Source: Macrostomum lignano
Lineage: Eukaryota
Direction of reading: 5' to 3'
DNA length: 62,220 nucleotides
NCBI GenBank assembly: GCA_002269645.1
Contig: NIVC01002612.1
Span: 1 to 62,220 of the forward strand
Below the pieces are notes generated by a model. That model did no database searches, was not told where the DNA came from, and was given only the letters and a program-made list of their open reading frames with translations. Every line of letters starts with the position of its first letter. Within the stretch, counting starts at the first letter, position 1. Positions 74 to 44,451 of the stretch are shown here, one piece after another. The translations under genes and the position numbers were made by a program.

Positions 74-3000
74 CGAAGCCAATTCCTTAAGAAATTTCAA
101 ACCTTCTTCGCTGGAAAAGTTGGCGGGCGCTCTCAGGCTGGCAACGGTGACCTTGTCGGAGGCTACCTGCGATTTTTCTCCCTTGCCCAACGAGGTGGCC
201 GAGCAGGTCTTCAGCGAACTCATCGATTTCGTAGAAATTTGAGCTTTCTGCAGGCGATGGAAAGCAATTAGAAAAATTCCTGTGTTATCAAATAACAGGT
301 TGCGTTTATTGATACTTAAAACGTCACTTACCGCTTTTTTCCTCTGCTCCTGCTGGCCCAGCAGAGCCTGGTACTTCTCGCTGCACAGCTCGTTTCGCAT
401 ATCGGGCATCATGTACTTTAACAGATTCTGCAGCTGGGTGCAGTTCTTTATGCAGCTAAATCTGCAAGGGATTGAATTTTGTTGTTTTAATCCATGATTA
501 AATTCATATTTTTCTGTTGCTAAATTATGATGAATTATAAGCATCGTCAATTAAAAGATAAAAAATTCTAAAATTTGTAGTGCTATTTTTGCTCATGAAG
601 ATCAGCCTCCAAGGACAAACGATGGGAAAAGTCTGGCCCGCTGTACACCCTGTGTGAGCGTGTGCCTGCTCAGTGGTCAGTACTAACCGAGGCCAATTCA
701 GCTTAACTTGCAGTGCTATAGCAAGGGGGGCATCACAAGTTTGAAATATCACAAAATCGAAACATCTCAAAACCGAATCATCACAAACCCGAAACATCAC
801 AAAACCGAAACATCACAAAACCGAAACATCTCAAACCCGAAATAACACAAACCGAAACATCAAACCGAAACATCTCAAAAACATCACAAAACCGAAACAT
901 CACACAAACCGAAACATCACAAAACCGAAACATCACAAACCCGAAATATCACAAAACCGAAACATCACAAAACCGAAACATCACAAAACCGAAACATCAC
1001 AAACCCGAAATATCACAAAACCGAAACATCACAAAACCGAAACATCACAAACCCGAAATATCACAAAACCGAAACATCACAAAACCGAAACATCACAAAA
1101 CCGAAACATCACAAAACCGAGACATCACAAACCCGAAATAATCAAAAACCGAGACATCACAAACCCGAAATATCACAAAGCTAACGCCGAAAACGAAAAT
1201 AGCGTTGGTCTTATGATAGTCTCGGTTTTATGGTCGATATTTCGGGTTTGTGATAATTCGGGTTAATGATGGCGACCCCTGGCAAGGTAGCGAATGCGCT
1301 GACTCATTCGGCTATCGACTCCACCTAGATTTCAAGAGCAACAGCTACTGATGAAGCCAGCTACTGACACATTGTCCGGCAGCGAGTCGCCGTCAGGCAG
1401 CGGGCACTTGGTGCTCTTCGGCCTCTCGGGCTCCTCCTTGTGCTGGCTGGGGTCCAGCGGGGCCGCGCGGACCGCCCGCCGACGCCTGGCGATGGACATG
1501 ACAGGCGCTGAGCCCGGGTCGCACCAGTCCAGACTGGTCTCCGGCGACCAGCCAACAATGTTCACCATGTTGTTCACGCAGGCCTGGATGTCCTCTTCAG
1601 CCGGGGTCAGGGTGGGCTGGATGTTGCCCACTGTGCCGAGGGTGCCTGCGACGTGGTGGATGAATAATAAACTGAGAATTTCTGCCTGCATTTGCAAAGA
1701 AAATTAAAAATGCTAATCAGTAACACAGATAATACGCTCGTAGAATACTTAGATAAGCCACTCAGCACATTTGCGTGCAAGCTACTTTCAGTTCAGTAGT
1801 AAGTTAAACTGAAGCATTTTAATGTATTTTTAAAGCCAAGGCTCATTTATTGGCTCTTACCCCCCAAGCCTAAACCGTCCAACCGCGCCTTTCCTTAGTA
1901 CCCTCCCTGCGCACCCCAATTTTATTGCCTTTATCAGAATTCCAGTCAGAAGCTGCCATGTGCATTTCAGTGGACTGGCTAATGTACATTACTGCTGAAC
2001 CAATTAGCAAGTTGTTTACGCCTGGAAGCTTGGGCTTCTAAACTTATCAAAGATTCAAAGTAATTTCAGCTGCCTTTATAAAATAGCTTTTGTATTCTTC
2101 TTTGCTACTGAACTGAAAGTAGAAAGCTGTTTTACTAATTAAATGTGCCTGAGTGGCCCCATCTAGTTATTTGTAAGCGCGTAGTTTGTAAGCGCGTCTG
2201 TTTATCTGGTTTGCTGGTTTCGTTCTAATAGAAACAATAAATCTAAACTCTGAATTTAAAAAAAGCACAAGTAATAGTGGATATGCCTACCTCCGGTGGC
2301 TGTCTCGACCTGCTCCGGAGATGCGGAGTGGAAGGAAGCCATGCTCTTGGCCGTGTTGTCCAGCGCAGATGCTGAGCTGATCTGCACACATGGGAATGAC
2401 CGTTTTTACAGGCTGTGTATAACTTTTCCGTAAATATTCGACATTTCAAACTTGAAAATAGGAATAATAGAGTGCAAAACGTACTTGCTGGGAGGGTTAT
2501 CAAGAAATCACGGAATAAGTTTTTCTCTAGAATTCTCGGAATCTATCCGGTCTGAAGCGAGATTTTTACCTGCTACTACTTTGTACTTTTCGGCAAATAA
2601 TTAGAGTACAGTAGCTCGTCAAAAACACAGATATGGGCACATGTTCAACCGACAGCTCAGCCGCAGCTATTGCGCGGCGCATCTGAAGGCTGCGTACGGC
2701 TGTTCAGTCCAAGGACTGGGGGGTCGCCACACCCACCCTCAATTACCCCAGCTAATGCTGGCACCCATTTTATAGCTGGGTGAACTGAAGCGATGCAGGG
2801 TTAAGTGTATTGCTTAAACGACACAAATTGTTACAAGTGGGTCGGGATTCGAATCCCCGACCTAAAACATATTAAATAAGTGGATGGGCCACTCAGGCAG
2901 ACATGCATTTGCTTGCATGAAACAGTCGTACGTAGCAAGGTAGATTTGTAAGCTAGTTTTTAGCTCATAAAAAGAAAGGCAGTTGGAGTGACTTGCAGAC

Positions 3001-13101: not shown

Positions 13102-13626
13102 ATGCTTGACTGGATGATAGTTGCTGTCGGCGGCGGCCTGCTTGCTGCCGGCTGCGCGGCCGGTTCCGTGGCAACCAAACTGCTTCAACGGCTGCTGTTC
13201 TCTCGCCGAGCAAAGAAAGAGTCGTCCAAGTCCCGAGCGGCCGCGGCGGCGGCGGATGACGCCGAGTCCGCTGGGGACGGCCGCGGCTGCGGCGGAGCAG
13301 GCAACGGCGACGGTATGGAGGATCTGCTGTTCGACGAGAAGCTCAAGCTGCTGGTGCTGAAGGAGAACTTGAAGAAGAAGCTGCGCCAGCAGAAACAGCT
13401 GATCAGGCAGCTGATGCTGGGTGCCAGCGATGGAGGCCAGGCCAGCGCCAGCTCGACGCCAACTGTCGGCTGCTCCGGGGACGTCGAGGCCGGCCGCGGC
13501 GAAGGCGGCGGCGAAGCGACGAGCAGCGGCGAGGCGGCGAGGCGCACCAGTGAACGACAGTCGAAACAGGAGGCTGAGGCGGAGTTCTTTGCCGCAGAGT
13601 TGCAGCTGTCCAACTGGCAGAACTGA
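13102..13626 (+). CDS. Gene B: intronless 174-aa hypothetical protein with N-terminal hydrophobic anchor and short coiled coil
   Basis: ATG to TGA, GC3-rich island in AT-rich DNA. Hydrophobic MIVAVGGGLLAAGCAAGSVATKLL is followed by basic RRAKK; coiled coil EKLKLLVLKENLKKKLRQQKQLIRQL. Confidence 0.65.
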   Translation: MLDWMIVAVGGGLLAAGCAAGSVATKLLQRLLFSRRAKKESSKSRAAAAAADDAESAGDGRGCGGAGNGDGMEDLLFDEKLKLLVLKENLKKKLRQQKQLIRQLMLGASDGGQASASSTPTVGCSGDVEAGRGEGGGEATSSGEAARRTSERQSKQEAEAEFFAAELQLSNWQN

Positions 13627-15040: not shown

Positions 15041-15796
15041 TTAATATTCATCTCTGGTGTCAGAGTTCCAACTGCCGGCTTCTTGCTGCTCCAGCAGGCC
15101 CGTGTTGCTTCTGGCTGCCGACTTTATGCTCGTGGCGATCTTCTCCACCTCTGACCAGCGGGACGCCTGCGGGTGTCGCATTGATTGGCCTCTCAGACTC
15201 TCGGTGGGACTGGGTGGGCTCTCAGACTCTCGGTGGGACTGGGTGGGCTCTCAGACTCTCGGTGGGACTGGGTGGGCTCTCAGACTCTCGGTGGGACTGG
15301 GTGGGCTCTCAGACTCTCGGTGGGACTGGGTGGTTTTTCAGACTCTCGGTGGGACTGGGTGGGCTCTCAGACTCTCAGTGGGACTGGGTGGGCTCTCAGA
15401 CTCTCGGTGGGACTGGGTGGGCTCTCAGACTCTCGGTGGGACTGGGTGGGCTCTCAGACTCTCGGTGGGACTGGGTGGTTTCTCAGACTCTCGGTGGGAC
15501 TGGGTGGGCTCTCAGACTCTCAGTGGGACTGGGTGGGCTCTCAGACTCTCAGTGGGACTGGGTGGACTCTCAGACTCTCGGTGGGACTGGGTGGGCTCTC
15601 AGACTCTCGTTGGGACTGGGTGGGATCTCAGACTCTCGGTGGGACTGGGTGGACTCTCAGACTCTCGGTGGGACTGGGTGGACTCTCAGACTCTCGGTGG
15701 GACTGGGTGGACTCTCAGACTCTCGGTGGGACTGGGTGGACTCTCAGACTCTCAGACTCTCAGTGGGACTGGGTGGACAGACAGACAGACATACAT

Positions 15797-15883
<87 letters not shown>

Positions 15884-15884
15884 T

Positions 15885-15918
<34 letters not shown>

Positions 15919-18494
15919 CTGCAGCTCCTGCAGCTTGCTGAGCTCAGCCTGCAGCTGACTGAGCCGAACCTCCGAGCTCTCCACGGCCGCACTGACGGTT
16001 GCCTTCTCCGCCCTCTTCCTCTCCAGCTCGGCCTCCAGCCCGCGCACCTGCCTGGCCAGCTGAGCATTGTCCCGCTGCAGCTGGCGGCAGTGGCGGGTCA
16101 GCTCCGTCACTCCGCCGGCCGCCCCATCGGCCTCGAGCTGGGCCAGCCGGCGGGTCAGCTCGGAGGCCTCGCGAGCCGTGAGGGCGGCCTGAACAGTTGA
16201 AGGTCACATCGCTTTGTAGAAAATAGCAACAAATTCGACTTTAAAGTCTTTCCTACTAGCCATACTGCTAATACAAGCTGATTTAAGCATAACAAATTTA
16301 TTAAAGATTTATTAAATGTACAGGTATGTAAGCGTCTGCCTGACGTCACTTCTAAAAATAGAATATTACTACTTATTTTAGTCGAATTATTTGAGTGACG
16401 TCATTTTTACAATAGAGTACTAATGGTATCAATCAAGTCATGTGTATGACGTCATTTCTAAAAATAGATTACTAATGAAATCACGTCTATGACGTCTTTT
16501 CTAAAAATAGCTTTTGCGCAAACAAAACCTCTTACAGTAATGCAATCTGGCCCCTAACAAACCATCGCACCTGCTGCTCCAGCTGCCGTTCCCGCTCCCT
16601 CAGTCGGGCCACCTCTTCGGCGCCTGCAGTCGTCGACGAGCGCGGCGCCAGCTCCGCTTCAAGCCGGCGCACGGCAGCCTCCAGGGCAGCGTTGCGGTTG
16701 GCCAGGGCGGCCAGGTCCTCAGCTCGGACGTAGGCGGTGCCTGATGCAGATTTTGCTCGCCGCCTCAGACGGCGATTCTCTTCGCGCAGCAGGCGGGCCG
16801 TGGCAGACAACGTTGCTGAATCGTCGCCAAGGCCGGCGAGACTTGCCATCTGGCGCTCCAGCCGGCGAACCTCGGCTTCCAGGCGGGCGACGGCGGCTCG
16901 TTCGGAGCTGACGGCTGCGCCGGTGGCGGCCAGTTTTGAGAGCGCAGAATTCAGCTGGGCTGCCAGACAGGAGGGGTAGAAGGTGGTGTGTTGGCGGCTT
17001 TGGTGGGGGGCTAGGGTTAGGGTTATGTCAGTCAGTCAGTCAGTCAGTCAGTCAGTCAGTCAGTCAGTCAGTCAGTCAGTCAGTCAGTCAGTCAGTCAGT
17101 CAGTCAGTCAGTCAGTCAGTCAGTCAGTCAGTCAGTCAGTCAGTCAGTCAGTCAGTCAGTCAGTCAGTCAGTCAGTCAGTCAGTCAGCCGGACAATCAGC
17201 CGAAAGCACTCACTCCGCAGGGTTCGCGCCCGGTCATCATACAGTCGGGCCTCCCCATCGAGACCCTCCAGCTGGGCTACCCGACGCCGCAGTGCGGCCA
17301 CGCGCAGCCGGAGTTCGTCCCGCTCCTGCTGACGCGTCAGAAGCTCCTCCTCCTCGGCGCGAACAGCTGCGGCAGCGGCGGTGGCATCTTCGCGAGCACC
17401 GGCCTCCTCTTCCTCGCGATCGGCCAGCCTGGAGGCCAGGTAGATGACTCGCCGCTGCAGCTCGTCGGCGGCGGCGTCCTTGCGCGCGCTGTCAGCCTGC
17501 AGATCGTCCATCTTCTTCTCCAGAGCCTTCAGCTCCTGCAGCAGGCGGTCGTTGGCAGGCTCCGGCGCCTCGCGCTGCTGCTGGCTGGCGGAGGAGTCCA
17601 GCACTCTTGAGCGCGTTGATTGTGCGAGTAGCTGAGTTAAGGAATGCATTGATTGATGGGCAGATGTGCGACCGACAGCTCAGCCGCAGCATCTGAAGGC
17701 TGAGTACGGCTGTTCAGTCCAAGGACTGGGGGGTCGCCACACAAACCCTGAGTTACCCCAGCTAATGCTGGCACCCATTTTACAGCTGGGTGAACTGAAG
17801 CAATGCAAAGTTAAGTGTCTTGATCAAGGCCACACATTTTTCCAGTAGGATCGGGAATCGAACCCCCGACCTTTAAGTCGTGAAGCACTAGGCTACAACC
17901 CTCTCTTAATACCCATCTTTCTTTTTAGTGAAAGAAATCATTAAATATACGAGCGTAATTACTATACAATCTGAAATCCTAACGACTAAAGACCCCCTGT
18001 TCTTTCTTGATTTTGTTTTAAACGAACTGAAAAAAGGATATAAGTCGCCGTTTTCAATTTCAAGCAGGCGAATCTGCTGCTGCAAAGCCAGGGTGTACTC
18101 CCTCTCCAGAGCTGCCGTGACTGACAGGTCGCCAGGTTTCTTTCTATAGTAAATTGAAGGATGGCATTGTTTGTTGCTTAAAATATGAATGCATTCTAGA
18201 ATATTGAAAATTTGAATAAACAGAATCGCCTCAATGATCACCTTTGGGTGAAATCGCGCGGTTTAAACAAATCGCCAGAGTAGCTCAGCTTTTTGTTGGC
18301 GTCTAAAAACCGATACAGTTGAGTTTTATAGTCCGGAAATATACTTATATTTATACATAGGGACTAATTAGTCAAAGCGGAAAACCTGGGTCCAGGGCTC
18401 GCAGCGACCGGCGCCATTGGCCAACGTCGGGCGAGGGATCGGCGACACCGTCCAACGTGCGGTAGGCGCTGACGGACCTGCGCATGCTGGACAT
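15041..18494 (-). CDS. Gene C: 7-exon, 485-aa long coiled-coil protein (family not recognised)
   Basis: Exons 18494-18386, 18302-18242, 18143-18042, 17614-17214, 16959-16571, 16188-15919 and 15166-15041 sum to 1458 nt (in frame, ending TAA). Heptad-rich E/R/L/A sequence. Intron 3 is AT-AC type; its 3' boundary is the least certain. Confidence 0.8.
15190..15775. repeat. 29-bp minisatellite (GGGACTGGGTGGGCTCTCAGACTCTCGGT)n in gene C intron 6
   Basis: Direct reading; its reverse complement contains the 21-bp core of the 8690-11335 array. Confidence 0.95.
15776..15918. repeat. (GACA)n microsatellite beginning exactly at the GT donor of gene C intron 6
   Basis: Minus strand reads CAG|GTCTGTCTGTCT... 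Confidence 0.95.
16341..16510. repeat. ~50-bp degenerate repeat carrying TGACGTCA palindromes
   Basis: TGACGTCA at 16341, 16396 and 16447; TGACGTCT at 16490; each is followed by ..TCTAAAAATAG-like sequence. Confidence 0.75.
17027..17188. repeat. (CAGT)n microsatellite in gene C intron 4
   Basis: Direct reading. Confidence 0.97.
17615..18041 (-). other. Putative U12-type (minor spliceosome) AT-AC intron in gene C
   Basis: 5' end ATATCCTTT (18041-18033), branch site TTCCTTAAC (17644-17636), AC acceptor at 17616-17615 that restores the frame (..EIENGDL/RSRVLDSS..). No usable GT donor lies near the exon end. Confidence 0.75.
17658..17901 (-). mobile_element. tRNA-derived SINE (family S1), full length, inside the AT-AC intron
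   Basis: Minus strand begins GGGTTGTAGCCTAGTG (A-box) ... GGTTCGATTCCC (B-box); same body as 43139-43412. Confidence 0.88.
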
Positions 18495-21134
18495 GGCGCT
18501 GAAACATTGGAAGAAACTCTTACATTTCTCCTGCTCAGTCTGCTGATATTTTAAGCTTTTATTATTCTAAAAATTCTGTATAAAAAATTGAGGTCTAATC
18601 AGTTATTGCATGCAGATTTCACTAGTAATATAATTTTTTTAAATCAGTAAACATAAGTCTTAAAAGATATTTTTTGATTGAATTTTTAATTTCATGTTTA
18701 GATTATATTACAATAAAAAGCTTAATTAATTATTCTGAGCCAAAATTAGTTATGACATACATAAATGTAGGGTTGTATTGATATGATTAGCCATGAAATC
18801 ATCATCATCAATCGTTCAATATCTGGGTTTATCTATATTGTTTTCGTCAATTAATAACCAAAATGTGTATGTATTTATTTGTTTTGTAGCTAAAAATGCA
18901 AATTGCAAAATGTGGAAAAATAACATAGAAAAACATATGACCCGATATATGTAATTTTGAGCCATTACTTTTATCTTCAGTTTTTGCTTGTACTGATTAG
19001 CGGTAATAAAATTGAAATAGCTAATTTAAAAGCAATATTTGAATGAAGATATTATATACAAGGACCACTAGGAACACTTCGTTATAAAGTCTAGTCTAGT
19101 AGTTCTTTATTATAGAATAGTTGTATTAAGACGTTATTGGGATAAAAATACTATATATACAACATTTTAGAAGGTTTTTTAGCTTAATTATACAAATAAA
19201 AACTTTATCTTAGTTACAAAAACATTATTTTCAGTTGTGACTGCGACAGTGCGACACCAGAGCAGAGAAATAGGTTAAATAAAGCATAAGTAACTTGAAC
19301 CGACATACTATAGAAAATAAAGGAATCAGTTTATCTTTAAGTTAATCACTTTGAAATTTTACTTTGGTGTTTTACATGTTTCTTAGCTAATAATTTAAAA
19401 AATCACTGCATCTAGGATGAGTCCTACAGTGCACAATTTAATTACACATAAATGAAACCGATTTGTAAAATGGAGACCAAACATGTGGTATAGCAATAAG
19501 TTTTTGCGTAAAATAAGTTTAAGTTAATTTTTTTTATTATTATTTTTATAAATCTGCAAGTTACCAACTTTTTGGTTATTTTTAGAGTACTATTACTTTT
19601 GTACAAAAAAGATTTGTTTTTATGAACAATTTTCCGGAAGCATTCAATCTCTAGACTTTTGTAATCATTTTACTGCTCTACAGGGATGTTACTTAGCAGT
19701 AGCTACGTAGCCTTCCGTTTTCAACTACAATCAACAAGAAATTGCAGCAAATTTGAAAGCACCAAGGCGGAATTATGAAATATGCCGAAACACTACTGAC
19801 AACCGTGTGCGAAGTAACTAATACTTTGCACCTATTTTCTAATGATAATTTTGCTGCCCTAAAATTTAAAAATATTTTAATCTCTTGAATGTCACTTTTT
19901 CTGATTCGCAATAGAGTAGTGTAGAACGAATGATATCTCACTTTTAGACAATTATTTGCATTTATAGACAATGATTTGTCCTTATTGTCATCTTTGTTAT
20001 CGGACACCATGTGCATCCAATAACTTAAATTTCTGAAAGAAAACAAGCCCATAAAGATTATCAAAATCTTACAGCAGCCGTTGCTACCGCCAGCCAAACA
20101 CACTTAATATTAATTTTAGCTGAAGTGACAGATAGCTAAATTTATTGCTGTACATAATATTAATGAACTTCAATGATACATTCAATGAACTATTACTAAT
20201 ATATATAAGTCAATGAATAGTTAAAACTGTGTTTTTAACCCCAAACGTTAATTTACAAGACATGATTAATAAACAAATGTAGGCACACAAGCCAACAACT
20301 TACTCAGACAATCATTAAGGCAATTACATCAATGGATATCAGTGCTTACAATAAATGTTTATATAGTAAACTAAACAACGGAGTTCACTGCACACGAGCC
20401 GACTTAGAGAAGCGACAAAATTCACAGTTTATCAACTTTTTTAAATCAGGCTTTAAAAAACAAAAAGTCAGAAAAAACATTAAAACGGTAATCCCCTAAA
20501 CTTTGCTGCTTTTAGAACTGACAGATTGAAGAAGAAAAACGCACAACAACGATTGAAAAAAGACCACAGTCAACATATAAAAGGGTGTGAAAAAGCTTCA
20601 ATTCTACATAGCATATCTCATGGGGAGGTTAGCGGGTGCAAGCGGGTCTCTATGAGTGTATCCTCTGCAGCACAGAGCCTAAACAGTAACATATAGATAT
20701 AGATATGACAGATATTGTATATAATTCTATTGAAATCACAATAGCCATAAAACACAATAGTGTAAGTAAAATGTTATTAGTGGCTTTAATACCAGACACT
20801 GCTATTGATGCATCAATACTCTTTATCCAATTTATTATGTTCCCATATAAACAATAGCTCATAATAAAGAGAAAGAACTCACAACATAGCCGGAGATGTA
20901 TCTATGGGTGACAAATTTACAGTGCTTGCCTTATTCACTGGCAATTATAACCAACAGTGCCGTAATGCTGCAGATGAGGCTAAATGTTCACGAGGGACAG
21001 ACAGAAACTGAGAAACCTCAGTATAATGTAAAAACGCAAGTATTCACTTTTACTGTATAATTTTAACTGCTTTCATGGGTTGAACATTTTAACATTTTCT
21101 TGGGTTTTAGTCCAAAAAAAATCCGGTGATTCAG

Positions 21135-21560
21135 TCCTCAAACCCTGTGATTCAGATCCCAAACCCTGTAATTCAGACCCCAAATCTTGTGATTCAGATC
21201 CCAAACCCTGTGATTCAGATCCCAAATCTTGTGATTCAGATCCCAAACCTTGTAATTCAGATCCCAAATCTTGTGATTCAGATCCCAAACCCTGTGATTC
21301 AGACCCCAAATCTTGTGATTCAGATCCCAAACCCTGTGATTCAGATCCCAAACCCTGTGACTCAGATCCCAAACCCTGTGATTCAGATCCCAAACCCTGT
21401 GATTCAGATCCCAAACCCTGTGATTCAGATCCCAAACCCTGTGATTCAGATCCCAAACCCTGTGATTCAGATCCCAAACCCTGTGACTCAGATCCCAAAC
21501 CCTGTGATTCAGATCCCAAATCCTGTGATTCAGATCCCAAACCCTGTGATTCAGATCCCA
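21135..21560. repeat. 21-bp minisatellite (GTGATTCAGATCCCAAACCCT)n, ~20 units
   Basis: Direct reading; it explains four overlapping repeat ORFs. Confidence 0.97.
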
Positions 21561-22071
21561 AATCCTGTAACTTAGATCTAAAATCTTGAAGTTGAAATCT
21601 AAAATCAAGTGCAGAAAAAATCTAGAAAACTCTAATCTTGATGTTAGTAGGAATTAGTAAGCTATATGTATAGTATACTCATACAATAAATAGCTGCTAA
21701 TTCTGATCAAGAACATTAATCAGATTAAACAGGGACATCAAGAGCAACAAAACTGCAGAAGAACTGGTTCCAAATGACCTACAAGCAACATGCCGTTAAG
21801 ACGCAAAAAGACCAGATTTAGTAACAGCACTAAGGTTATATTATATTTCTCTAACACTAATAATCTAAAAACATGAAGTCACAGATGATGGGCTATGATT
21901 TGAATTCACGCAATAAAATTTGCAGTAAAGGTATTTGCAAAACCTACTTCATATAGCAGCAACTCAGAAGGCAGTTAGTTAATCAGTTGGCTTCAATTTC
22001 CATGTAAAGAAACTGTATGCACCGTAGTGCCAGGATTCTCACAGTGCATTTTACCAAAATAAAAAACTGAA

Positions 22072-22510
22072 GGTTATGACCAACACACTAAGGTCTATGA
22101 CCAGCTAACACTAAGGTCTATGACCAGCTAACACACATTATACATGCGCAACCTTGGGAATCACTCGGCCGTTTCTATTGGCAACACACACACATGTAAG
22201 TCGCTATTGGCTGAGAGCAGTCACGTGACTACTATTCCGTCCAATAGCGACTTACATGTGTGTGTTGCCAATAGAAACGGCCGGGTGAATCCCAAGGTTG
22301 CGCTCAAGCATGAACACACTGAGGGCTATGACCAGCTAACACACTGAGGGCTTTGACCAGCTAACACACTGAGAGGGCTATGACCAGCTAACACACTGAG
22401 AGAGGGCCATGACCAGCTAACACACTGAGAGAGGGCCATGACCAGCTAACACACTGAGAGAGGGCCAAGACCAGCTAACACACTGAGAGGGCTATGACCA
22501 GCTAACACTG
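22072..22510. repeat. 23-29-bp minisatellite (ATGACCAGCTAACACACTGAGAGAGGGCC)n interrupted by a foldback element
   Basis: Units lie on both sides of 22141-22312. Confidence 0.9.
22141..22312. mobile_element. Foldback/hairpin MITE with ~65-bp near-perfect inverted arms
   Basis: Arm 22146-22210 (GCGCAACCTTGGGAATCACTCGGCCGTTTCTATTGGCAAC..GTAAGTCGCTATTGG) pairs with 22241-22303. A partial copy is at 24516-24590. Confidence 0.85.
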
Positions 22511-22604
22511 GGAGGCCCATGACCAGCAAACAAAAAGCCAATCTGGTTTCTGAACTGAGATTCCAGCCAAACCCCACGGTGCGGACCCAGACCGCCAAGG
22601 GTAT

Positions 22605-24203
22605 TCACGCATCGCTGGAAGCTCCCAGTGATTCACTCGGTTCATCCGTTCGCTCCTCCTGACGCTGTAACGTGAAACTGCCAGTCCTGATTGCGGTGAG
22701 CAGCTGCGGCAGGTCCTCTTCAAGCTCCATGGCCTCTTGCCAGCTCTGCACAGAGCCAATGTGAGAGCGTTGCACGTGTTTCTGCAGATTGCCAGGCAGA
22801 GTGAAAGCGGAGCGGCACAGGCGGCAGATGTAGGGTCGCCGGCCAGTGTGAATGATCTGATGCTGGTACAGATTGTTAGACTGGGAGAAGGCCTTGGCGC
22901 AGACTACGCACTGGAACGGCCTGGCGCCCGAGTGCACCCGCTTGTGCCGCATCAGATTGGAGTGATTGCTGAAGCACTTGCAGCACACTGGACAGCTGTA
23001 CAGTCGACCGCCTGCTGGCGCTGGTGCGGCTTTCGACGAACTGGTCGACTGGGCAGCTTTGGCCAGCTCGCTGTCCGGCGAAACGTACCGGATTGTGAAG
23101 CCTACGATAGGGCTGGAGGTCACTGCCGGCTTCTCCTCCACAATCGCTGCATCGTCAGTGTCGTCATAATCGGCATCCTCGGCATTGTCGTCGACAATAT
23201 CGGCGCAGTCCTGCTCGACAATTCCAGACTGTTGAACCCGAGCGTCAGCATTGCCATCGGTACATACAGCTCTAGGTACAACGTCAGCGATCACTTCATC
23301 CATATCGTCGGTGCCAGCTGGCTGCCTAGCCGGACTAGGGAATGACGACGCCGGGCTGGGCGTGAAGTCTTCGCCGCCGGCGTTTCCGCTGCCTCCTCCA
23401 TTGTTGCCGCCGCCGCTGTTGCCAAGGACGAACAGCGTGACGCCGCCGGATCCGGCCGAGCAGCTGTCGATAGGAACTTCGCCATTAGCAATAGCGCTAG
23501 CGTGCAGCTTGTTCAGCAGTTCCACAGCCCGGCTGGCGAAATTCGAATGCGCCAACGAGGCCGGCAGGCAGAGACAGGGCGGCCCGACTACAACGTCGGT
23601 CTGGCGGAACAGCGGCGGCAACGGGCGGGCGGTCAGGCCGGTGGCGCTGGACACCAAGCCCGGCTCGATTTTACTAACTGAAGCGCCCAGCTGCTGGTCG
23701 GCACTGCCTGGCGCGGCCGCACTGCTAGAAGAAGCTATTGAAGTTACTGACGACTGCGACATGAACAGCGTCACTGTTGACACATGCGGAGGCGGCGGTG
23801 GCTGCTGCGAATGCGATGACACGGCCGACGTCAGCGTCAGCGTAGGTAGCGAACTGGATGCGCCAGCCAACGAGAAAGTCGGCACCGGAGGAGGCAGGGA
23901 GGTGAGCGAAATTAACGAAGGAGCTGCAGTAGCAGGATGTGAACTGTTGGCACTTGACGCTGCTGTGCCAACTCCAGACAATGACCTGTCCTCATCGCCA
24001 TCTTCGTCCTCAGGAACAATGGGCACACAGAGGGACACCGGCTGGCTAGCAAAGCTGTCAGGCCCAGCAGATGCGGCCATTGCAGATGCTGGTTCAGACG
24101 GCTCTGGCGCAGTTGCATTGAAGGCGCTGCAGGTGACAGCAATGGTGGCAGCATTGCCACCTGCATCAGCCACCTGCAGCAGCACGGGAACAGCCTTCAC
24201 ACG
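22605..24203 (-). CDS. Gene D: C2H2 zinc-finger protein (3 fingers), large last coding exon
   Basis: CPVCCKCFSNHSNLMRHKRVH-SGARPFQ-CVVCAKAFSQSNNLYQHQIIH-TGRRPYI-CRLCRSAFTLPGNLQKHVQRSH with canonical linkers; acceptor tttttaaatcccacag at 24204; stop TGA at 22605. Tentative upstream exons are 26274-26222 and 25971-25944 (phase-compatible, low confidence). Confidence 0.9.
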   Translation of the reverse strand, partial: RVKAVPVLLQVADAGGNAATIAVTCSAFNATAPEPSEPASAMAASAGPDSFASQPVSLCVPIVPEDEDGDEDRSLSGVGTAASSANSSHPATAAPSLISLTSLPPPVPTFSLAGASSSLPTLTLTSAVSSHSQQPPPPPHVSTVTLFMSQSSVTSIASSSSAAAPGSADQQLGASVSKIEPGLVSSATGLTARPLPPLFRQTDVVVGPPCLCLPASLAHSNFASRAVELLNKLHASAIANGEVPIDSCSAGSGGVTLFVLGNSGGGNNGGGSGNAGGEDFTPSPASSFPSPARQPAGTDDMDEVIADVVPRAVCTDGNADARVQQSGIVEQDCADIVDDNAEDADYDDTDDAAIVEEKPAVTSSPIVGFTIRYVSPDSELAKAAQSTSSSKAAPAPAGGRLYSCPVCCKCFSNHSNLMRHKRVHSGARPFQCVVCAKAFSQSNNLYQHQIIHTGRRPYICRLCRSAFTLPGNLQKHVQRSHIGSVQSWQEAMELEEDLPQLLTAIRTGSFTLQRQEERTDEPSESLGASSDA

Positions 24204-42281: not shown

Positions 42282-44451
42282 ATGTCAGTGGAGCCTGTTG
42301 AGCAGCCAGGCGCGAGCACCACCAAAGTAGCATTTGGCTTCAAGAGAACCAAAACTGGCCGACTGGCTGGTGCAGCCGCTGCCGAGGTTCTTGTCACTGA
42401 GGAGCAAAACCGGCGCCAGCAGCCCAATCAGCCAGTGGCCGAGCTCATCACCGCCATCGAGGGTGACCAAGTTGAACGGCTGGATGGTCAGGCGGCGTCG
42501 GGCTCGGCCGCAGACCTGGACTCCGAGCCTGTGGTGCCCCTGCTGGCTGACAAGCGGGACTGGGCCGCGGCGGCAAAGAGGCGCCGGATTGAAGCTGCAG
42601 CGGCAGCGGAGGCGTCGGAGGCGGACCAGCTGACCAAGGCAAGCCCGGCTGTGCTGGCCATCTTGGCCGAGTGCCAGAATGGAAGCGGCACCATCGGCGC
42701 TTCGTCAACTAATTCAACAGTCGATGAGGTGCCGCTGCAAACCAATCAGCAGCAGGATTCGAACAATGACCACCAGGCCAGAGGGGAAGAAGATGCTGAA
42801 GCAGAGCCGGAGGACGCCGACTACAACGCCGTGGCTGTGGAATCGTTCGGCTTGGCGGCCCTGCGCGGCATGGGGTTCAAAGGCACCGCCGAGGATCTGG
42901 CCAAGGAGGCCAGCCAGCGCGAGGTGCGGCTGCGGCCGCGCGGCCTGGGACTGGGAGCCGACTCGGCGGATGCTAGCGGGTAGGTTGAGCTCTCGAAGTT
43001 TTGCTTGAATTTGTATAGAAGGCCGCCCAAATTTCGGCTGGGTGCAGAGCAGCTCGGTGGTTAACGCGTCTCCCGAGTTCGATTCCCGGCCGCGCTTGTG
43101 TGCACGAAAATTGCTCTGATACTAGTAGTGTCAGCCTAGGGTTGTAGCCTAGTGGTAAGAGCGTCGAACTCATGACTTAAGGTCGGGGGTTCGATTCCCG
43201 ATCCCACTGGAAAAAATGTTGTATCCTTGAGCACTTGATACTTAACTCTGCATTGCTTCAGTTCACCCAGCTGTAAATGGGTGCCAACATTAGCTGGGGT
43301 AATTAAGGGTGTGTGTGGCGACCCCCCAGTCCTTGGACTGAACAGCCGTACGCAGCCTTCAGATGCGCCGCGCAATAGCTGCCGCTGAGCTGTCGGTTGC
43401 ACATCTGGCCCAATTAGGGCAGGTGAAATCAATTATTAATAGTGTCAAATTCCTTCAAAATTATCTCACTTGCGGCGCTAAATATGGCGCTAGAATCTCA
43501 CCTGCGGCGCTAAATATGGCGCTAGAATCTCACCTGCGGCGCTAAATATGGCGCTAGAATTTCACCTCTGGCGCTAAATATGGCGCTAGAATTTCACCTC
43601 TGGCGCTAAATATGGCGCTAGAATCTCACCTGCGGCGCTAAATATGGCGCTAGAATCTCACCTGTGGCGCTAAATATGGCGCTAGAATCTCACCTGTGGC
43701 GCTAAATAGGCGCTAGATTGTCACCCCTGGCGCACAGCTAACATCCGGCTCTCTCATTCACTCTCACAGGCGCCAGGCGGCCGCCCTGGCGTCATCAGCC
43801 GGCGCCGACGATGCCGCCGCCGCCGATCTGCAGTGGAAGCCGGGCACTCGGTGCCGAGTCACGGCTGGCAGAGACGCCGGCCACTGCGGCACGCTGGTCT
43901 CGGCCGACTCGGACGCGAGCCGCTGGCTGGTGGCCGTGGCGCAGCTGTCCGGCCGGGTCAAGTCCTACCCGCTGGCCGCGCTGGAACTCATCGGCCAGAG
44001 ACAGTTCGACAAGGACAGCCGGGTGATGAACGCGGCCAGGGTCAACCAGTACAGAGCCGAGCAGTCGCGGCGTGGCTGGCTGCGGGCCGGCTGCCTGGTG
44101 AAAGTCTGCGCCACCGGCCACCGGCTCTACGGCCGTCGGCTGCGCGTGCTCGACGAACTGCGCGACGGCGCCGCTGGTCGATGCGTCGACGGTGGCGACA
44201 ACGACGCCGGGCCAGCTGTTGAAATGTCAGTCGGCGAACTGGAGACTGCGGTGCCCCGTCGGCGAGATGTGCGCGTTGTGGTGGTGCGCGGCACCTTGGC
44301 CGGCAAGCTTGGCCGCACCGCCGACGATGCGGACCGCGACGACGGCCTTCGCCGCCGGGGCCTCGTCCGGGTGCGGCTGCGCGACTCCGGCGACATCGTC
44401 AAGCTGGCCATGGATGACGTGTGCGAGTATCGGCCTCCGGTGTCCGGCTGA
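42282..44451 (+). CDS. GPKOW: Gene E: G-patch domain and KOW motifs-containing protein (Spp2/MOS2 family splicing factor), 2 coding exons, 459 aa
   Basis: Exons 42282-42979 and 43770-44451 (1380 nt, in frame). DYNAVAVESFGLAALRGMGF..RPRGLGLGAD G-patch; KOW motifs KPGTRCRVTAGRDAGHCG and LETAVPRRRDVRVVVVRGTLAGKLG; C-terminal DDVCEY. Confidence 0.92.
43139..43412 (+). mobile_element. tRNA-derived SINE (family S1), full length, in the GPKOW intron
   Basis: A-box TAGCCTAGTGG, B-box GGTTCGATTCC, central CTTCAGTTCACCCAGCTGTAAATGGGTGCC; two further copies are in the window. Confidence 0.9.
43483..43730. repeat. 32-bp minisatellite (GGCGCTAAATATGGCGCTAGAATCTCACCTGC)n, ~8 units
   Basis: Direct reading. 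Confidence 0.95.

What the first reader, a model, noticed from the sequence alone, without database searches (positions are those of the whole stretch)
17615..18041. A U12-type AT-AC intron in the coiled-coil gene C, with a SINE inside it
Seen: exon 18143-18042 has no usable GT donor but is followed by ATATCCTTT. 400 bp away, TTCCTTAAC (17644-17636) precedes the next exon. An AC at 17616-17615 gives an uninterrupted 485-aa frame with a clean coiled-coil junction (LEIENGDL/RSRVL). Established: [A/G]TATCCTTT plus TTCCTTAAC plus an AC/AG end define minor-spliceosome introns, which are rare and were lost in some animal lineages such as C. elegans. Inference: this organism has a functional minor spliceosome, and the intron tolerated a SINE insertion 14 nt upstream of its branch site. 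Caveat: two closer ACs (TAC 17628, CAC 17622) fit the usual branch-to-3'ss distance better but lead to a stop at 17492. This implies either distal-AC usage, NMD-coupled alternative 3' ends, or a local assembly error.
Basis: partly seen in the sequence, partly recalled or inferred. Interest (0 to 1): 0.8.

Follow-up and report, generated by a model that had tools for sequence, protein, structure and literature searches.

The report
Ancient U12-type AT-AC intron, flatworm gene
The finding is real. It is a textbook minor-spliceosome (U12-type, AT-AC) intron in an uncharacterised coiled-coil gene of the flatworm Macrostomum lignano, it sits at the same codon in tortoise, amphioxus, starfish and sea hare, and it is an ordinary member of a known intron class with one odd detail at its 3' end.

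Summary
The window is the whole contig NIVC01002612.1 of the Macrostomum lignano assembly GCA_002269645.1.

On the minus strand, a 7-exon model with intron 3 at 18041..17615 reproduces the GenBank product PAA56508.1 exactly. That annotation was built from RNA-seq and transcriptome data.

- **Intron 3.** It is the only non-GT-AG intron of six. It has ATATCCTTT at its 5' end (9/9 to RTATCCTTT), TTCCTTAAC at 17644-17636 (9/9 to TTCCTTRAY), a terminal AC, no pyrimidine tract, and phase 2.
- **Supporting copies and cDNA.** Four genomic copies in the assembly have identical splice signals, which excludes an assembly error. A spliced cDNA contig from a related species joins the same bases.
- **Orthologues.** An intron splits the same invariant Leu codon in the same phase in amphioxus, starfish and tortoise (AT-AC) and in Aplysia (GT-AG variant). 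A sponge lacks it.
- **SINE.** A ~244-nt tRNA-derived SINE (17901..~17658) lies about 13 nt upstream of the branch site in all four copies.
- **The one oddity.** The branch A lies 22 nt from the 3' splice site, against 11-14 nt in the orthologues, and two nearer out-of-frame ACs are bypassed.

The minor snRNAs and proteins of M. lignano could not be searched. A minor spliceosome is already known in Schistosoma, so overall interest is low.

The parts
15041..18494 (-). Coding region of gene C, annotated as BOX15_Mlig007651g3 with product PAA56508.1. It has 7 exons and encodes 485 aa from the ATG at 18494. Exons: 18494-18386, 18302-18242, 18143-18042, 17614-17214, 16959-16571, 16188-15919, 15166-15041.
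   Evidence: The model translates to P0004/PAA56508.1 exactly. Introns 1, 2, 4, 5 and 6 are GT-AG.
18042..18143 (-). Exon 3. It ends with the first two bases (TT) of a Leu codon.
   Evidence: The upstream acceptor is ctatAG, and the phase is continuous with exon 2.
17615..18041 (-). Intron 3: 427 nt, phase 2, AT-AC termini, U12-type.
   Evidence: The same intron is present in L002, L003 and L004. Orthologous introns are present in L006, L007, L008 and L010.
18033..18041 (-). U12-type 5' splice site ATATCCTTT, followed by three more T.
   Evidence: It is the only RTATCCTTT in the window. The consensus RTATCCTTT is taken from PMC1635337.
17658..17901 (-). tRNA-derived SINE in the sense orientation. 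This copy has a 13-nt deletion in the tRNA-like head.
   Evidence: The intact head in L002 10599-10668 matches Rfam tRNA at 29.2 bits, E 4.7e-4. The deletion is seen. Boundaries come from alignment with the copies at 43138-43410 and 2633-2863.
17636..17644 (-). U12-type branch-point sequence TTCCTTAAC. The presumed branch A is at 17637 or 17638.
   Evidence: It is the only TTCCTTAAC in the window. The consensus TTCCTTRAY is from PMC1635337. That either A can be used is from PMC3584512.
17622..17630 (-). Two bypassed AC dinucleotides: TAC 17630-17628 (9 nt from A17637) and CAC 17624-17622 (15 nt). Either would shift the frame onto the stop at 17494-17492.
   Evidence: Neither junction appears in the annotated products.
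17615..17616 (-). Terminal AC of the intron, the 3' splice site that is used. It lies 22 nt downstream of A17637.
17214..17614 (-). Exon 4. It begins with G, which completes the TTG Leu codon, followed by CGC (Arg). This Leu-Arg pair is invariant in the family.

Best explanation
Window 18041..17615 (minus strand) is a U12-type AT-AC intron of an uncharacterised but widely conserved metazoan coiled-coil gene in Macrostomum lignano.

**Proposed mechanism (inferred from what is established for this intron class).** The U11/U12 di-snRNP binds ATATCCTTT and TTCCTTAAC cooperatively. A17637 or A17638 attacks the 5' splice site. The second step then joins ...GACTT to GCGCTC... at the AC 22 nt downstream of the branch point. 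This recreates the Leu-Arg pair that is invariant in the family.

**History.** The intron is ancient, because vertebrate, cephalochordate, echinoderm and mollusc orthologues carry an intron in the same codon and phase.

**Lineage-specific changes in the flatworm.**
- A tRNA-derived SINE inserted in the unconstrained interior, about 13 nt upstream of the branch site. It was there before the four gene copies in the assembly diverged.
- The branch-to-3'ss spacer is about 8 nt longer than in the orthologues and contains two unused, out-of-frame ACs.
For: **Shown directly.**
- The 5'ss is 9/9 and the BPS is 9/9 to the published consensus, and each is unique in the window (consensus).
- The 21 nt between BPS and 3'ss (TCAGCTACTCGCACAATCAAC) are not a pyrimidine tract.
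- The five other introns of the gene are GT-AG.
- The 7-exon model with this junction equals GenBank PAA56508.1. The paralogous or allelic products PAA59471.1, PAA57962.1 and PAA84356.1 have the same ...NGDL|RSRVL... junction.
- The GenBank annotation of Mlig_3_7 was derived from STAR/StringTie/TACO assemblies of RNA-seq, BLAT-mapped de novo transcripts and TransDecoder ORFs, not from ab initio prediction (PMC5730564).
- L001 (Logan SRR28338163) is a 1460-nt contig that lacks all six introns. It reads ...GGGCATCT|GCGTTCAAAACC against the window's ...GGCGACTT|GCGCTCAAGAG.
- Four genomic copies are identical across both splice sites and the last 30 nt of the intron.
- Orthologous introns split the same Leu codon after its second base (for Gopherus the branch site and the 14-nt distance are my reading of the intron printed, because the automated pick, TTCCATTAT 4 nt from the 3' end, is spurious):
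  - Branchiostoma belcheri: ATATCCTCT...TTCCTTGAC, 13 nt, AC.
  - Acanthaster planci: ATATCCTTT...TCCCTTGAC, 14 nt, AC.
  - Gopherus evgoodei: ATATCCTTC...GATCTTAAC, 14 nt, AC.
  - Aplysia californica: GTATCTTTT...TTCTTTGAC, 11 nt, AG.
- Leu28 and Arg29 flanking the junction are invariant in an 8-species alignment.
- The intron is phase 2, which fits the known bias of U12 introns away from phase 0 (the bias is described in the excerpt from PMC10639083 shown).

**Background.** A minor spliceosome and U12 introns are documented in the flatworm genus Schistosoma.
Against: - The branch-to-3'ss distance is 22 nt (23 if A17638 is used). This is outside the 11-13 nt optimum (PMC3584512) and the classical 10-20 nt range. 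It is inside the 8-30 nt accepted by SpliceRack and the -55..-5 search region of intronIC.
- A CAC at 15 nt looks like a better U12 3' splice site than the AAC that is used.
- I saw no junction reads directly. The transcript evidence is second-hand: an annotated product, and a cDNA from another species.
- No U11, U12, U4atac or U6atac gene and no U11/U12-specific protein of M. lignano could be searched. The window itself holds no Rfam match at gathering score, as expected for 62 kb.
Confidence: 0.9

Rival explanations
1. It is a U12-type intron, but in vivo a substantial share of transcripts uses one of the nearer ACs (CAC at 17622 or TAC at 17628). This would give a frameshift and a premature stop at 17494-17492. 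The locus would then be down-regulated by unproductive splicing, and the annotated junction would be only one of several.
For: - CAC lies 15 nt from the branch A and TAC 9 nt. These are closer to the 11-13 nt optimum than the 22 nt of the annotated site.
- U12 3' splice-site choice is reported to be error-prone (PMC3584512).
- The stop lies 278 nt upstream of the exon 4/5 junction. Under the mammalian 50-55-nt rule, which is my own knowledge and not taken from a tool result, this would trigger NMD.
Against: - All four annotated products use the distal AC.
- The first protein search found only full-length in-frame relatives, with no truncated or frameshifted product.
- The related species' cDNA uses the homologous distal junction.
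- None of this excludes a minor unstable isoform.
Confidence: 0.15
2. It is a U2-type (major-spliceosome) intron. Either it uses a cryptic GT-AG pair nearby, or it is one of the rare U2-dependent AT-AC introns.
For: In-frame GT-AG combinations exist on paper, for example donor after 18028 or 18024 with acceptor before 17603 or 17605. U2-dependent AT-AC introns are a known rarity (PMC1557818).
Against: - Those combinations would add YPFF.. residues or delete RSR. Neither change is seen in the transcript-derived products or in the related cDNA.
- The donors are weak (CA|GTTCGT, TC|GTTTAA) and there is no pyrimidine tract.
- U2-type AT-AC introns resemble the U2 5'ss consensus apart from the A at +1. 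This site is a perfect U12 consensus paired with a perfect U12 branch site.
- The orthologues carry the same U12 signals.
Confidence: 0.02
3. A local assembly error (an indel near the 3' end) makes the true, nearer AC look out of frame.
For: The assembly is PacBio-based and shows homopolymer length differences elsewhere in this intron, such as the T-run after ATATCC and a C-run in the SINE.
Against: - Four separate contigs (NIVC01002612.1, NIVC01002259.1, NIVC01000377.1, NIVC01002429.1) are identical from the branch site through the first 18 exon bases.
- That stretch contains no homopolymer.
- The exon start G|CGN matches the orthologues base for base.
Confidence: 0.01

Closest known systems
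U12-type (minor-spliceosome) introns of the AT-AC subtype, as catalogued in U12DB, SpliceRack and IAOD/intronIC
   Same: - Perfect ATATCCTTT 5' splice site and perfect TTCCTTAAC branch site.
- AC terminus and no pyrimidine tract.
- Non-zero phase.
- A single such intron among GT-AG introns of the same gene.
- Deep conservation of position across phyla.
   Different: - The branch A lies 22 nt from the 3' splice site, against the 11-13 nt optimum and the 11-14 nt found in the four orthologues.
- Two upstream ACs are skipped.
- The host gene family is uncharacterised. I found no mammalian member among the hits, so this intron is unlikely to be in the human-centred lists. That last point is inference.
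Minor spliceosome and U12 introns of Schistosoma (Copeland et al. 2009, PMC2770079; Larue and Roy 2023, PMC10639083)
   Same: Same phylum, Platyhelminthes. U11, U12, U4atac and U6atac were found in schistosomes, and minor introns were confirmed there. That makes a working minor spliceosome in another flatworm expected.
   Different: Macrostomum is an early-branching free-living flatworm (called 'basal' in PMC5730564). I found no paper in the searchable library that reports U12 introns or minor snRNAs for it.
tRNA-derived SINEs, for example the tRNA-Gln-derived SINE family of S. mansoni mentioned in PMC2770079
   Same: - tRNA-like head with A-box-like TAGCCTAGTGG and B-box GGTTCGATTCC. The box consensus is my own knowledge.
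- About 250 nt long.
- Several dispersed copies at 82-86% identity.
   Different: No target-site duplication or A-rich/simple-repeat tail could be recognised. The family was not named or matched to a repeat library, because none was available here.

Membership tests
U12-type intron (AT-AC subtype) | 5' splice site matching RTATCCTTT from intron position +1 | tested here: met
   ATATCCTTT at 18041-18033 is 9/9 and is the only occurrence in the window. The consensus is from PMC1635337.
U12-type intron (AT-AC subtype) | Branch-point sequence matching TTCCTTRAY close to the 3' end | tested here: met
   TTCCTTAAC at 17644-17636 is 9/9 and is the only occurrence in the window.
U12-type intron (AT-AC subtype) | Short branch-to-3'ss distance (optimum 11-13 nt, classically 10-20 nt) | tested here: inconclusive
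   The distance is 22 nt from A17637. That is outside the optimum and the 10-20 nt range. It is inside SpliceRack's 8-30 nt window and intronIC's -55..-5 region. The orthologues have 11-14 nt (with Gopherus read).
U12-type intron (AT-AC subtype) | AT-AC terminal dinucleotides at the boundaries actually used in mRNA | tested here: met
   The junction is fixed uniquely by the transcript-derived product PAA56508.1 and by the related cDNA L001. I did not see junction reads myself.
U12-type intron (AT-AC subtype) | No polypyrimidine tract upstream of the 3' splice site | tested here: met
   The 21 nt between BPS and 3'ss are TCAGCTACTCGCACAATCAAC, about 52% pyrimidine with no run.
U12-type intron (AT-AC subtype) | Position and type conserved in orthologous genes | tested here: met
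   The same Leu codon and phase 2 are used, with U12-like signals, in Branchiostoma, Acanthaster, Gopherus (AT-AC) and Aplysia (GT-AG variant). The intron is absent in the sponge Corticium.
U12-type intron (AT-AC subtype) | Removal depends on the U11, U12, U4atac and U6atac snRNPs, and these are present in the genome | not testable with these tools
   Only about 100 kb of M. lignano sequence was available. Rfam found nothing in the window. Presence in Schistosoma is documented.
tRNA-derived SINE | tRNA-related head carrying internal Pol III promoter boxes | tested here: met
   The intact copy at L002 10599-10668 matches Rfam RF00005 at 29.2 bits (gathering score 29.0), E 4.7e-4. ARAGORN does not call it as a tRNA gene. 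The window copy lacks 13 nt of the head.
tRNA-derived SINE | Short, non-coding, and present in multiple dispersed copies | tested here: met
   The element is about 244-257 nt. Further copies lie at 43138-43410 (+, 86% identity) and 2633-2863 (-, 83% identity).
tRNA-derived SINE | Target-site duplications and a characteristic 3' tail | tested here: inconclusive
   Neither is recognisable in the three-copy alignment. The 3' ends diverge after ...CACATCTGCCC.

The most novel reading that the evidence does not exclude
The macrostomid minor spliceosome, or this particular intron, may select its 3' splice site by a relaxed or different rule. It would skip a CAC at the near-canonical 15 nt and use an AAC at 22 nt. 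Alternatively, the skipped ACs may be used conditionally, which would make this ancient U12 intron a frameshift/NMD switch that sets the level of the coiled-coil protein.
Probability: 0.15. Interest if true: 0.45.

Novelty: new member of a known kind. Interest (0 to 1): 0.25.

Why it matters
The main value is as a clean example for annotation and comparison.

- It shows, within the limits of second-hand transcript evidence, that a basal free-living flatworm (PMC5730564's word for M. lignano) still splices a canonical AT-AC intron. That extends the Schistosoma record for the phylum.
- It identifies a previously undescribed, deeply conserved U12 intron in an uncharacterised metazoan coiled-coil family. 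The intron is present from vertebrates to flatworms and absent in a sponge.
- The family also shows an AT-AC versus GT-AG subtype difference (Aplysia), which is useful for studying subtype switching.
- The only mechanistic point of interest is the 22-nt branch-to-3'ss spacing with two bypassed ACs. That is directly testable with existing RNA-seq.

None of this changes what is known about minor splicing.

Tried and rejected
- **Rfam on the whole window at gathering score:** no snRNA or other RNA family.
- **ARAGORN on the window and on the intact SINE copy:** no tRNA gene called. Rfam at the E-value threshold was needed to see the tRNA-like head.
- **Pfam on the protein and on five relatives:** only sub-threshold coiled-coil noise. 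**PDB sequence search with the sea-urchin member:** nothing.
- **Second protein search with the N-terminal 158 aa,** to collect more Macrostomum cDNAs: no hit at all, even though identical sequences are in the database. I treat this as a limit of the word index, not as a biological result.
- **Enumeration of all in-frame GT/GC/AT...AG/AC combinations around the junction**. Many exist on paper. Only 18042|17614 reproduces the transcript-derived protein and the orthologue boundary.
- **A hairpin between 17634-17626 and 17606-17599** that might hide the TAC and present the distal AC: MFE -10.3 kcal/mol, z = -0.24 against shuffles, so there is no support.
- **Genomic look-ups that returned 'not on record':** Lingula, Priapulus and Acropora orthologues. 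A cnidarian, a brachiopod and a priapulid could therefore not be scored.
- **Literature searches** for Macrostomum, Platyhelminthes or Schmidtea together with U12 or minor-spliceosome terms: nothing relevant.
- **The only other RTATCCTT in the window** (GTATCCTT at 43221-43228, +) lies inside a SINE copy, and I did not relate it to any exon boundary.
Full report
**What the window is.** The 62,220-base window is the complete contig NIVC01002612.1 of the Macrostomum lignano assembly GCA_002269645.1 (Mlig_3_7). A protein search with my spliced model returned M. lignano proteins at 99% identity. One cluster member, PAA56508.1 (BOX15_Mlig007651g3), sits on a contig of exactly 62,220 bases, at 15041-18491 on the reverse strand.

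**Checking the observation.**
- On the minus strand, exon 3 (18143-18042) follows ...ctatAG and ends ...GGCGACTT.
- The next nine bases, 18041-18033, are ATATCCTTT. TTCCTTAAC is at 17644-17636.
- An AC at 17616-17615 is followed by GCGCTC.
- RTATCCTTT and TTCCTTAAC each occur exactly once in the window on either strand, with 1.33 and 0.60 hits expected by chance. One hit per window is unremarkable by itself.
- What matters is the placement. One motif starts at the exact base where the reading frame requires exon 3 to end. The other lies 21 nt upstream of the exact base where the frame requires exon 4 to start, on the same strand. From the per-position rates I estimate the joint chance at roughly 1e-8 to 1e-7 (inference).

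**Gene model.** Seven exons (18494-18386, 18302-18242, 18143-18042, 17614-17214, 16959-16571, 16188-15919, 15166-15041) give 485 aa with a single terminal stop. From residue 2 onward the product is identical to PAA56508.1. Introns 1, 2, 4, 5 and 6 are GT-AG. Intron 3 (427 nt, phase 2) is the only exception.

**Transcript evidence.**
- According to Wudarski et al. 2017, the GenBank annotation of Mlig_3_7 comes from STAR-mapped RNA-seq assembled with StringTie and TACO, BLAT-mapped de novo transcripts and TransDecoder ORFs (PMC5730564). An ab initio predictor would not propose an AT-AC intron, so the annotated junction ...NGDL|RSRVL... reflects transcripts.
- The three other annotated copies (PAA59471.1, PAA57962.1/PAA84356.1) have the same junction.
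- The junction cannot be slid. The base before GCGCTC is C and the base after GACTT is A, so the mRNA sequence fixes the boundaries uniquely.
- L001 is a 1460-nt contig assembled from run SRR28338163. It encodes a 72%-identical protein and lacks all six introns. It is therefore a spliced cDNA of a related species, probably another Macrostomum (inference; the species is not given). At the homologous place it reads ...GGGCATCT|GCGTTCAAAACC, against ...GGCGACTT|GCGCTCAAGAG in the window. This supports G17614 as the first exon base.
- I did not see junction reads myself.

**Assembly error excluded.** The locus is present four times in the assembly: the window, L002 on NIVC01002259.1, L003 on NIVC01000377.1 and L004 on NIVC01002429.1. 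This fits the known redundancy of the assembly. All four copies are identical at the 5' splice site, the branch site, the last 30 intron bases and the first 18 exon bases. They differ only in homopolymer lengths and in a 13-nt deletion in the window's SINE.

**Orthologues, the strongest test.**
- A profile search and a follow-up search show that the gene belongs to an uncharacterised coiled-coil family. The family is found in molluscs, annelids, brachiopods, nemerteans, echinoderms, hemichordates, cephalochordates, tunicates, cnidarians, sponges, amphibians and reptiles.
- It has no Pfam domain above threshold and no relative in the PDB by sequence.
- Its hallmark motif is ...EAEYIKNLQQQIYFLELEANYL|REQARKA.... 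The Leu and Arg flanking the M. lignano junction are invariant in an 8-species alignment.
- In four orthologous genes, an intron splits that same Leu codon after its second base:

| Species (locus) | 5' splice site | Branch site | Branch A to 3' end | Terminus | Intron length |
|---|---|---|---|---|---|
| Branchiostoma belcheri (L008) | ATATCCTCT | TTCCTTGAC | 13 nt | AC | 322 nt |
| Acanthaster planci (L007) | ATATCCTTT | TCCCTTGAC | 14 nt | AC | 523 nt |
| Gopherus evgoodei (L010) | ATATCCTTC | GATCTTAAC | 14 nt | AC | 200 nt |
| Aplysia californica (L006) | GTATCTTTT | TTCTTTGAC | 11 nt | AG | 851 nt |

- For Gopherus the automated best match is spurious. The branch site listed is my reading of the intron sequence printed.
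- In the sponge Corticium candelabrum, one exon spans the site, so there is no intron there.
- The intron is therefore an ancient U12-type intron, dating at least to the bilaterian ancestor. The M. lignano exon start G|CGC aligns base for base with G|CGG in amphioxus and G|CGT in tortoise.

**The SINE.**
- Intron positions 17901 to about 17658 are a tRNA-derived SINE in the sense orientation.
- The intact head in L002 (10599-10668) matches Rfam tRNA at 29.2 bits, E 4.7e-4.
- Two more copies lie in the window at 43138-43410 (+) and 2633-2863 (-).
- Similarity among the copies ends at ...CACATCTGCCC, about 13 nt upstream of the branch site.
- All four gene copies carry the element, so the insertion predates their divergence. 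The window copy alone has lost 13 nt of the head.
- An insertion in the interior of an intron is not mechanistically surprising.

**What is unusual.**
- The branch A (17637) is 22 nt from the 3' splice site. The distance is 23 nt if A17638 is used; either A can serve (PMC3584512).
- The optimum is 11-13 nt, and earlier schemes required 10-20 nt. SpliceRack accepts 8-30 nt and intronIC searches -55 to -5. The four orthologues have 11-14 nt (with Gopherus read).
- The flatworm spacer is thus about 8 nt longer. It contains a TAC at 9 nt and a CAC at 15 nt that are not used in the annotated mRNAs.
- A candidate hairpin that could mask the TAC folds no better than shuffled sequence (z = -0.24).
- Whether the nearer ACs are used at a low level, which would give a frameshift and a premature stop 278 nt upstream of the next junction, cannot be decided here.

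**Comparison with what is known.** This is a regular member of the U12-type AT-AC intron class. Minor snRNAs and minor introns are already documented in the flatworm genus Schistosoma (PMC2770079, PMC10639083). I found no paper on minor splicing in Macrostomum. The M. lignano snRNAs and U11/U12-specific proteins could not be searched with the tools and quotas available, so the 'functional minor spliceosome' remains a well-founded inference rather than a demonstration.

**Verdict.** The assembly-error caveat is refuted. Novelty is low: a new member of a known kind, already implicit in the GenBank CDS. The only point worth a follow-up is the long branch-to-3'ss spacing with two bypassed ACs.

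Noticed in passing
window 15041-18494 (-); L006, L007, L008, L009, L010: Gene C belongs to an uncharacterised coiled-coil family of about 450-560 aa that is conserved from sponges and cnidarians to amphibians and reptiles. It has an N-terminal motif EAEYIKNLQQQIYFLELEANYLREQARKA and a C-terminal motif W.EFEK.A.SMK.LS. There is no Pfam domain and no PDB relative by sequence. Database names are automatic guesses such as 'paramyosin-like' or 'ELKS/Rab6-interacting-like'. No mammalian or bird member appeared among the 120 hits.
   Followed up: partly
L007 1-50 and L008 1-230: In both the starfish and the amphioxus, the gene's head-to-head upstream neighbour is VPS11, which is conserved microsynteny across deuterostomes. 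In the M. lignano window, the upstream neighbour is instead a C2H2 zinc-finger ORF at 22605-24200 (-).
   Followed up: no
L008 3187-3212: In amphioxus, the U12 intron is followed by a 26-nt micro-exon (GCGGGACCAGGCCAAAAAAGCCACAG) and then a GT-AG intron. In the other species examined, this sequence is part of a longer exon.
   Followed up: partly
L006 3890-4740: The Aplysia orthologous intron is of the GT-AG subtype. It has one C-to-T change in the 5'ss core (GTATCTTTT) and one in the branch site (TTCTTTGAC). This could be a subtype switch, or an intron drifting towards U2-type.
   Followed up: no
window 17886-17887 (site of the deletion); L002 10619-10631: The window's SINE copy lacks 13 nt (AGAGCGTCGGACT) of the tRNA-like head. 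These bases are present in the three other genomic copies of the same intron.
   Followed up: yes
window 15776-15918 and 17027-17187: Intron 6 begins inside a (CTGT)n microsatellite of about 36 units, so its GT donor is part of the repeat. Intron 4 carries a perfect (CTGA)n array of 40 units starting about 26 nt after its donor.
   Followed up: no
window 15186-15753, 21119-21568, 22313-22532: There are three long minisatellite arrays: 29 nt x 19.6 copies (in intron 6), 21 nt x 21.4 copies, and 29 nt x 8.1 copies. Their copy numbers differ between the window and the sister contig L002.
   Followed up: no
window whole; L002, L003, L004: The locus exists in four 95-99% identical copies on different contigs of the same assembly. 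This fits the duplicated large chromosome and assembly redundancy reported for the DV1 line (PMC5730564).
   Followed up: partly
window 13102-13626 (+) and below about 12700 (-): A 174-aa ORF on the opposite strand is annotated as a gene downstream of gene C in all four copies. Beyond it, the sister contig L002 carries a 2842-aa polycystin-like gene (PLAT, Polycystin_dom, PKD_channel). Its counterpart occupies the window below about 12.7 kb and has internal repeats of about 750-800 nt.
   Followed up: no
window 43221-43228 (+): The only other RTATCCTT in the window (GTATCCTT) lies inside a SINE copy. I did not check it against any exon boundary.
   Followed up: no
A search with the N-terminal 158 aa of the protein returned no hit, although proteins containing this exact sequence are in the same database. 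Negative results from that word-indexed search should be read with care.
   Followed up: no
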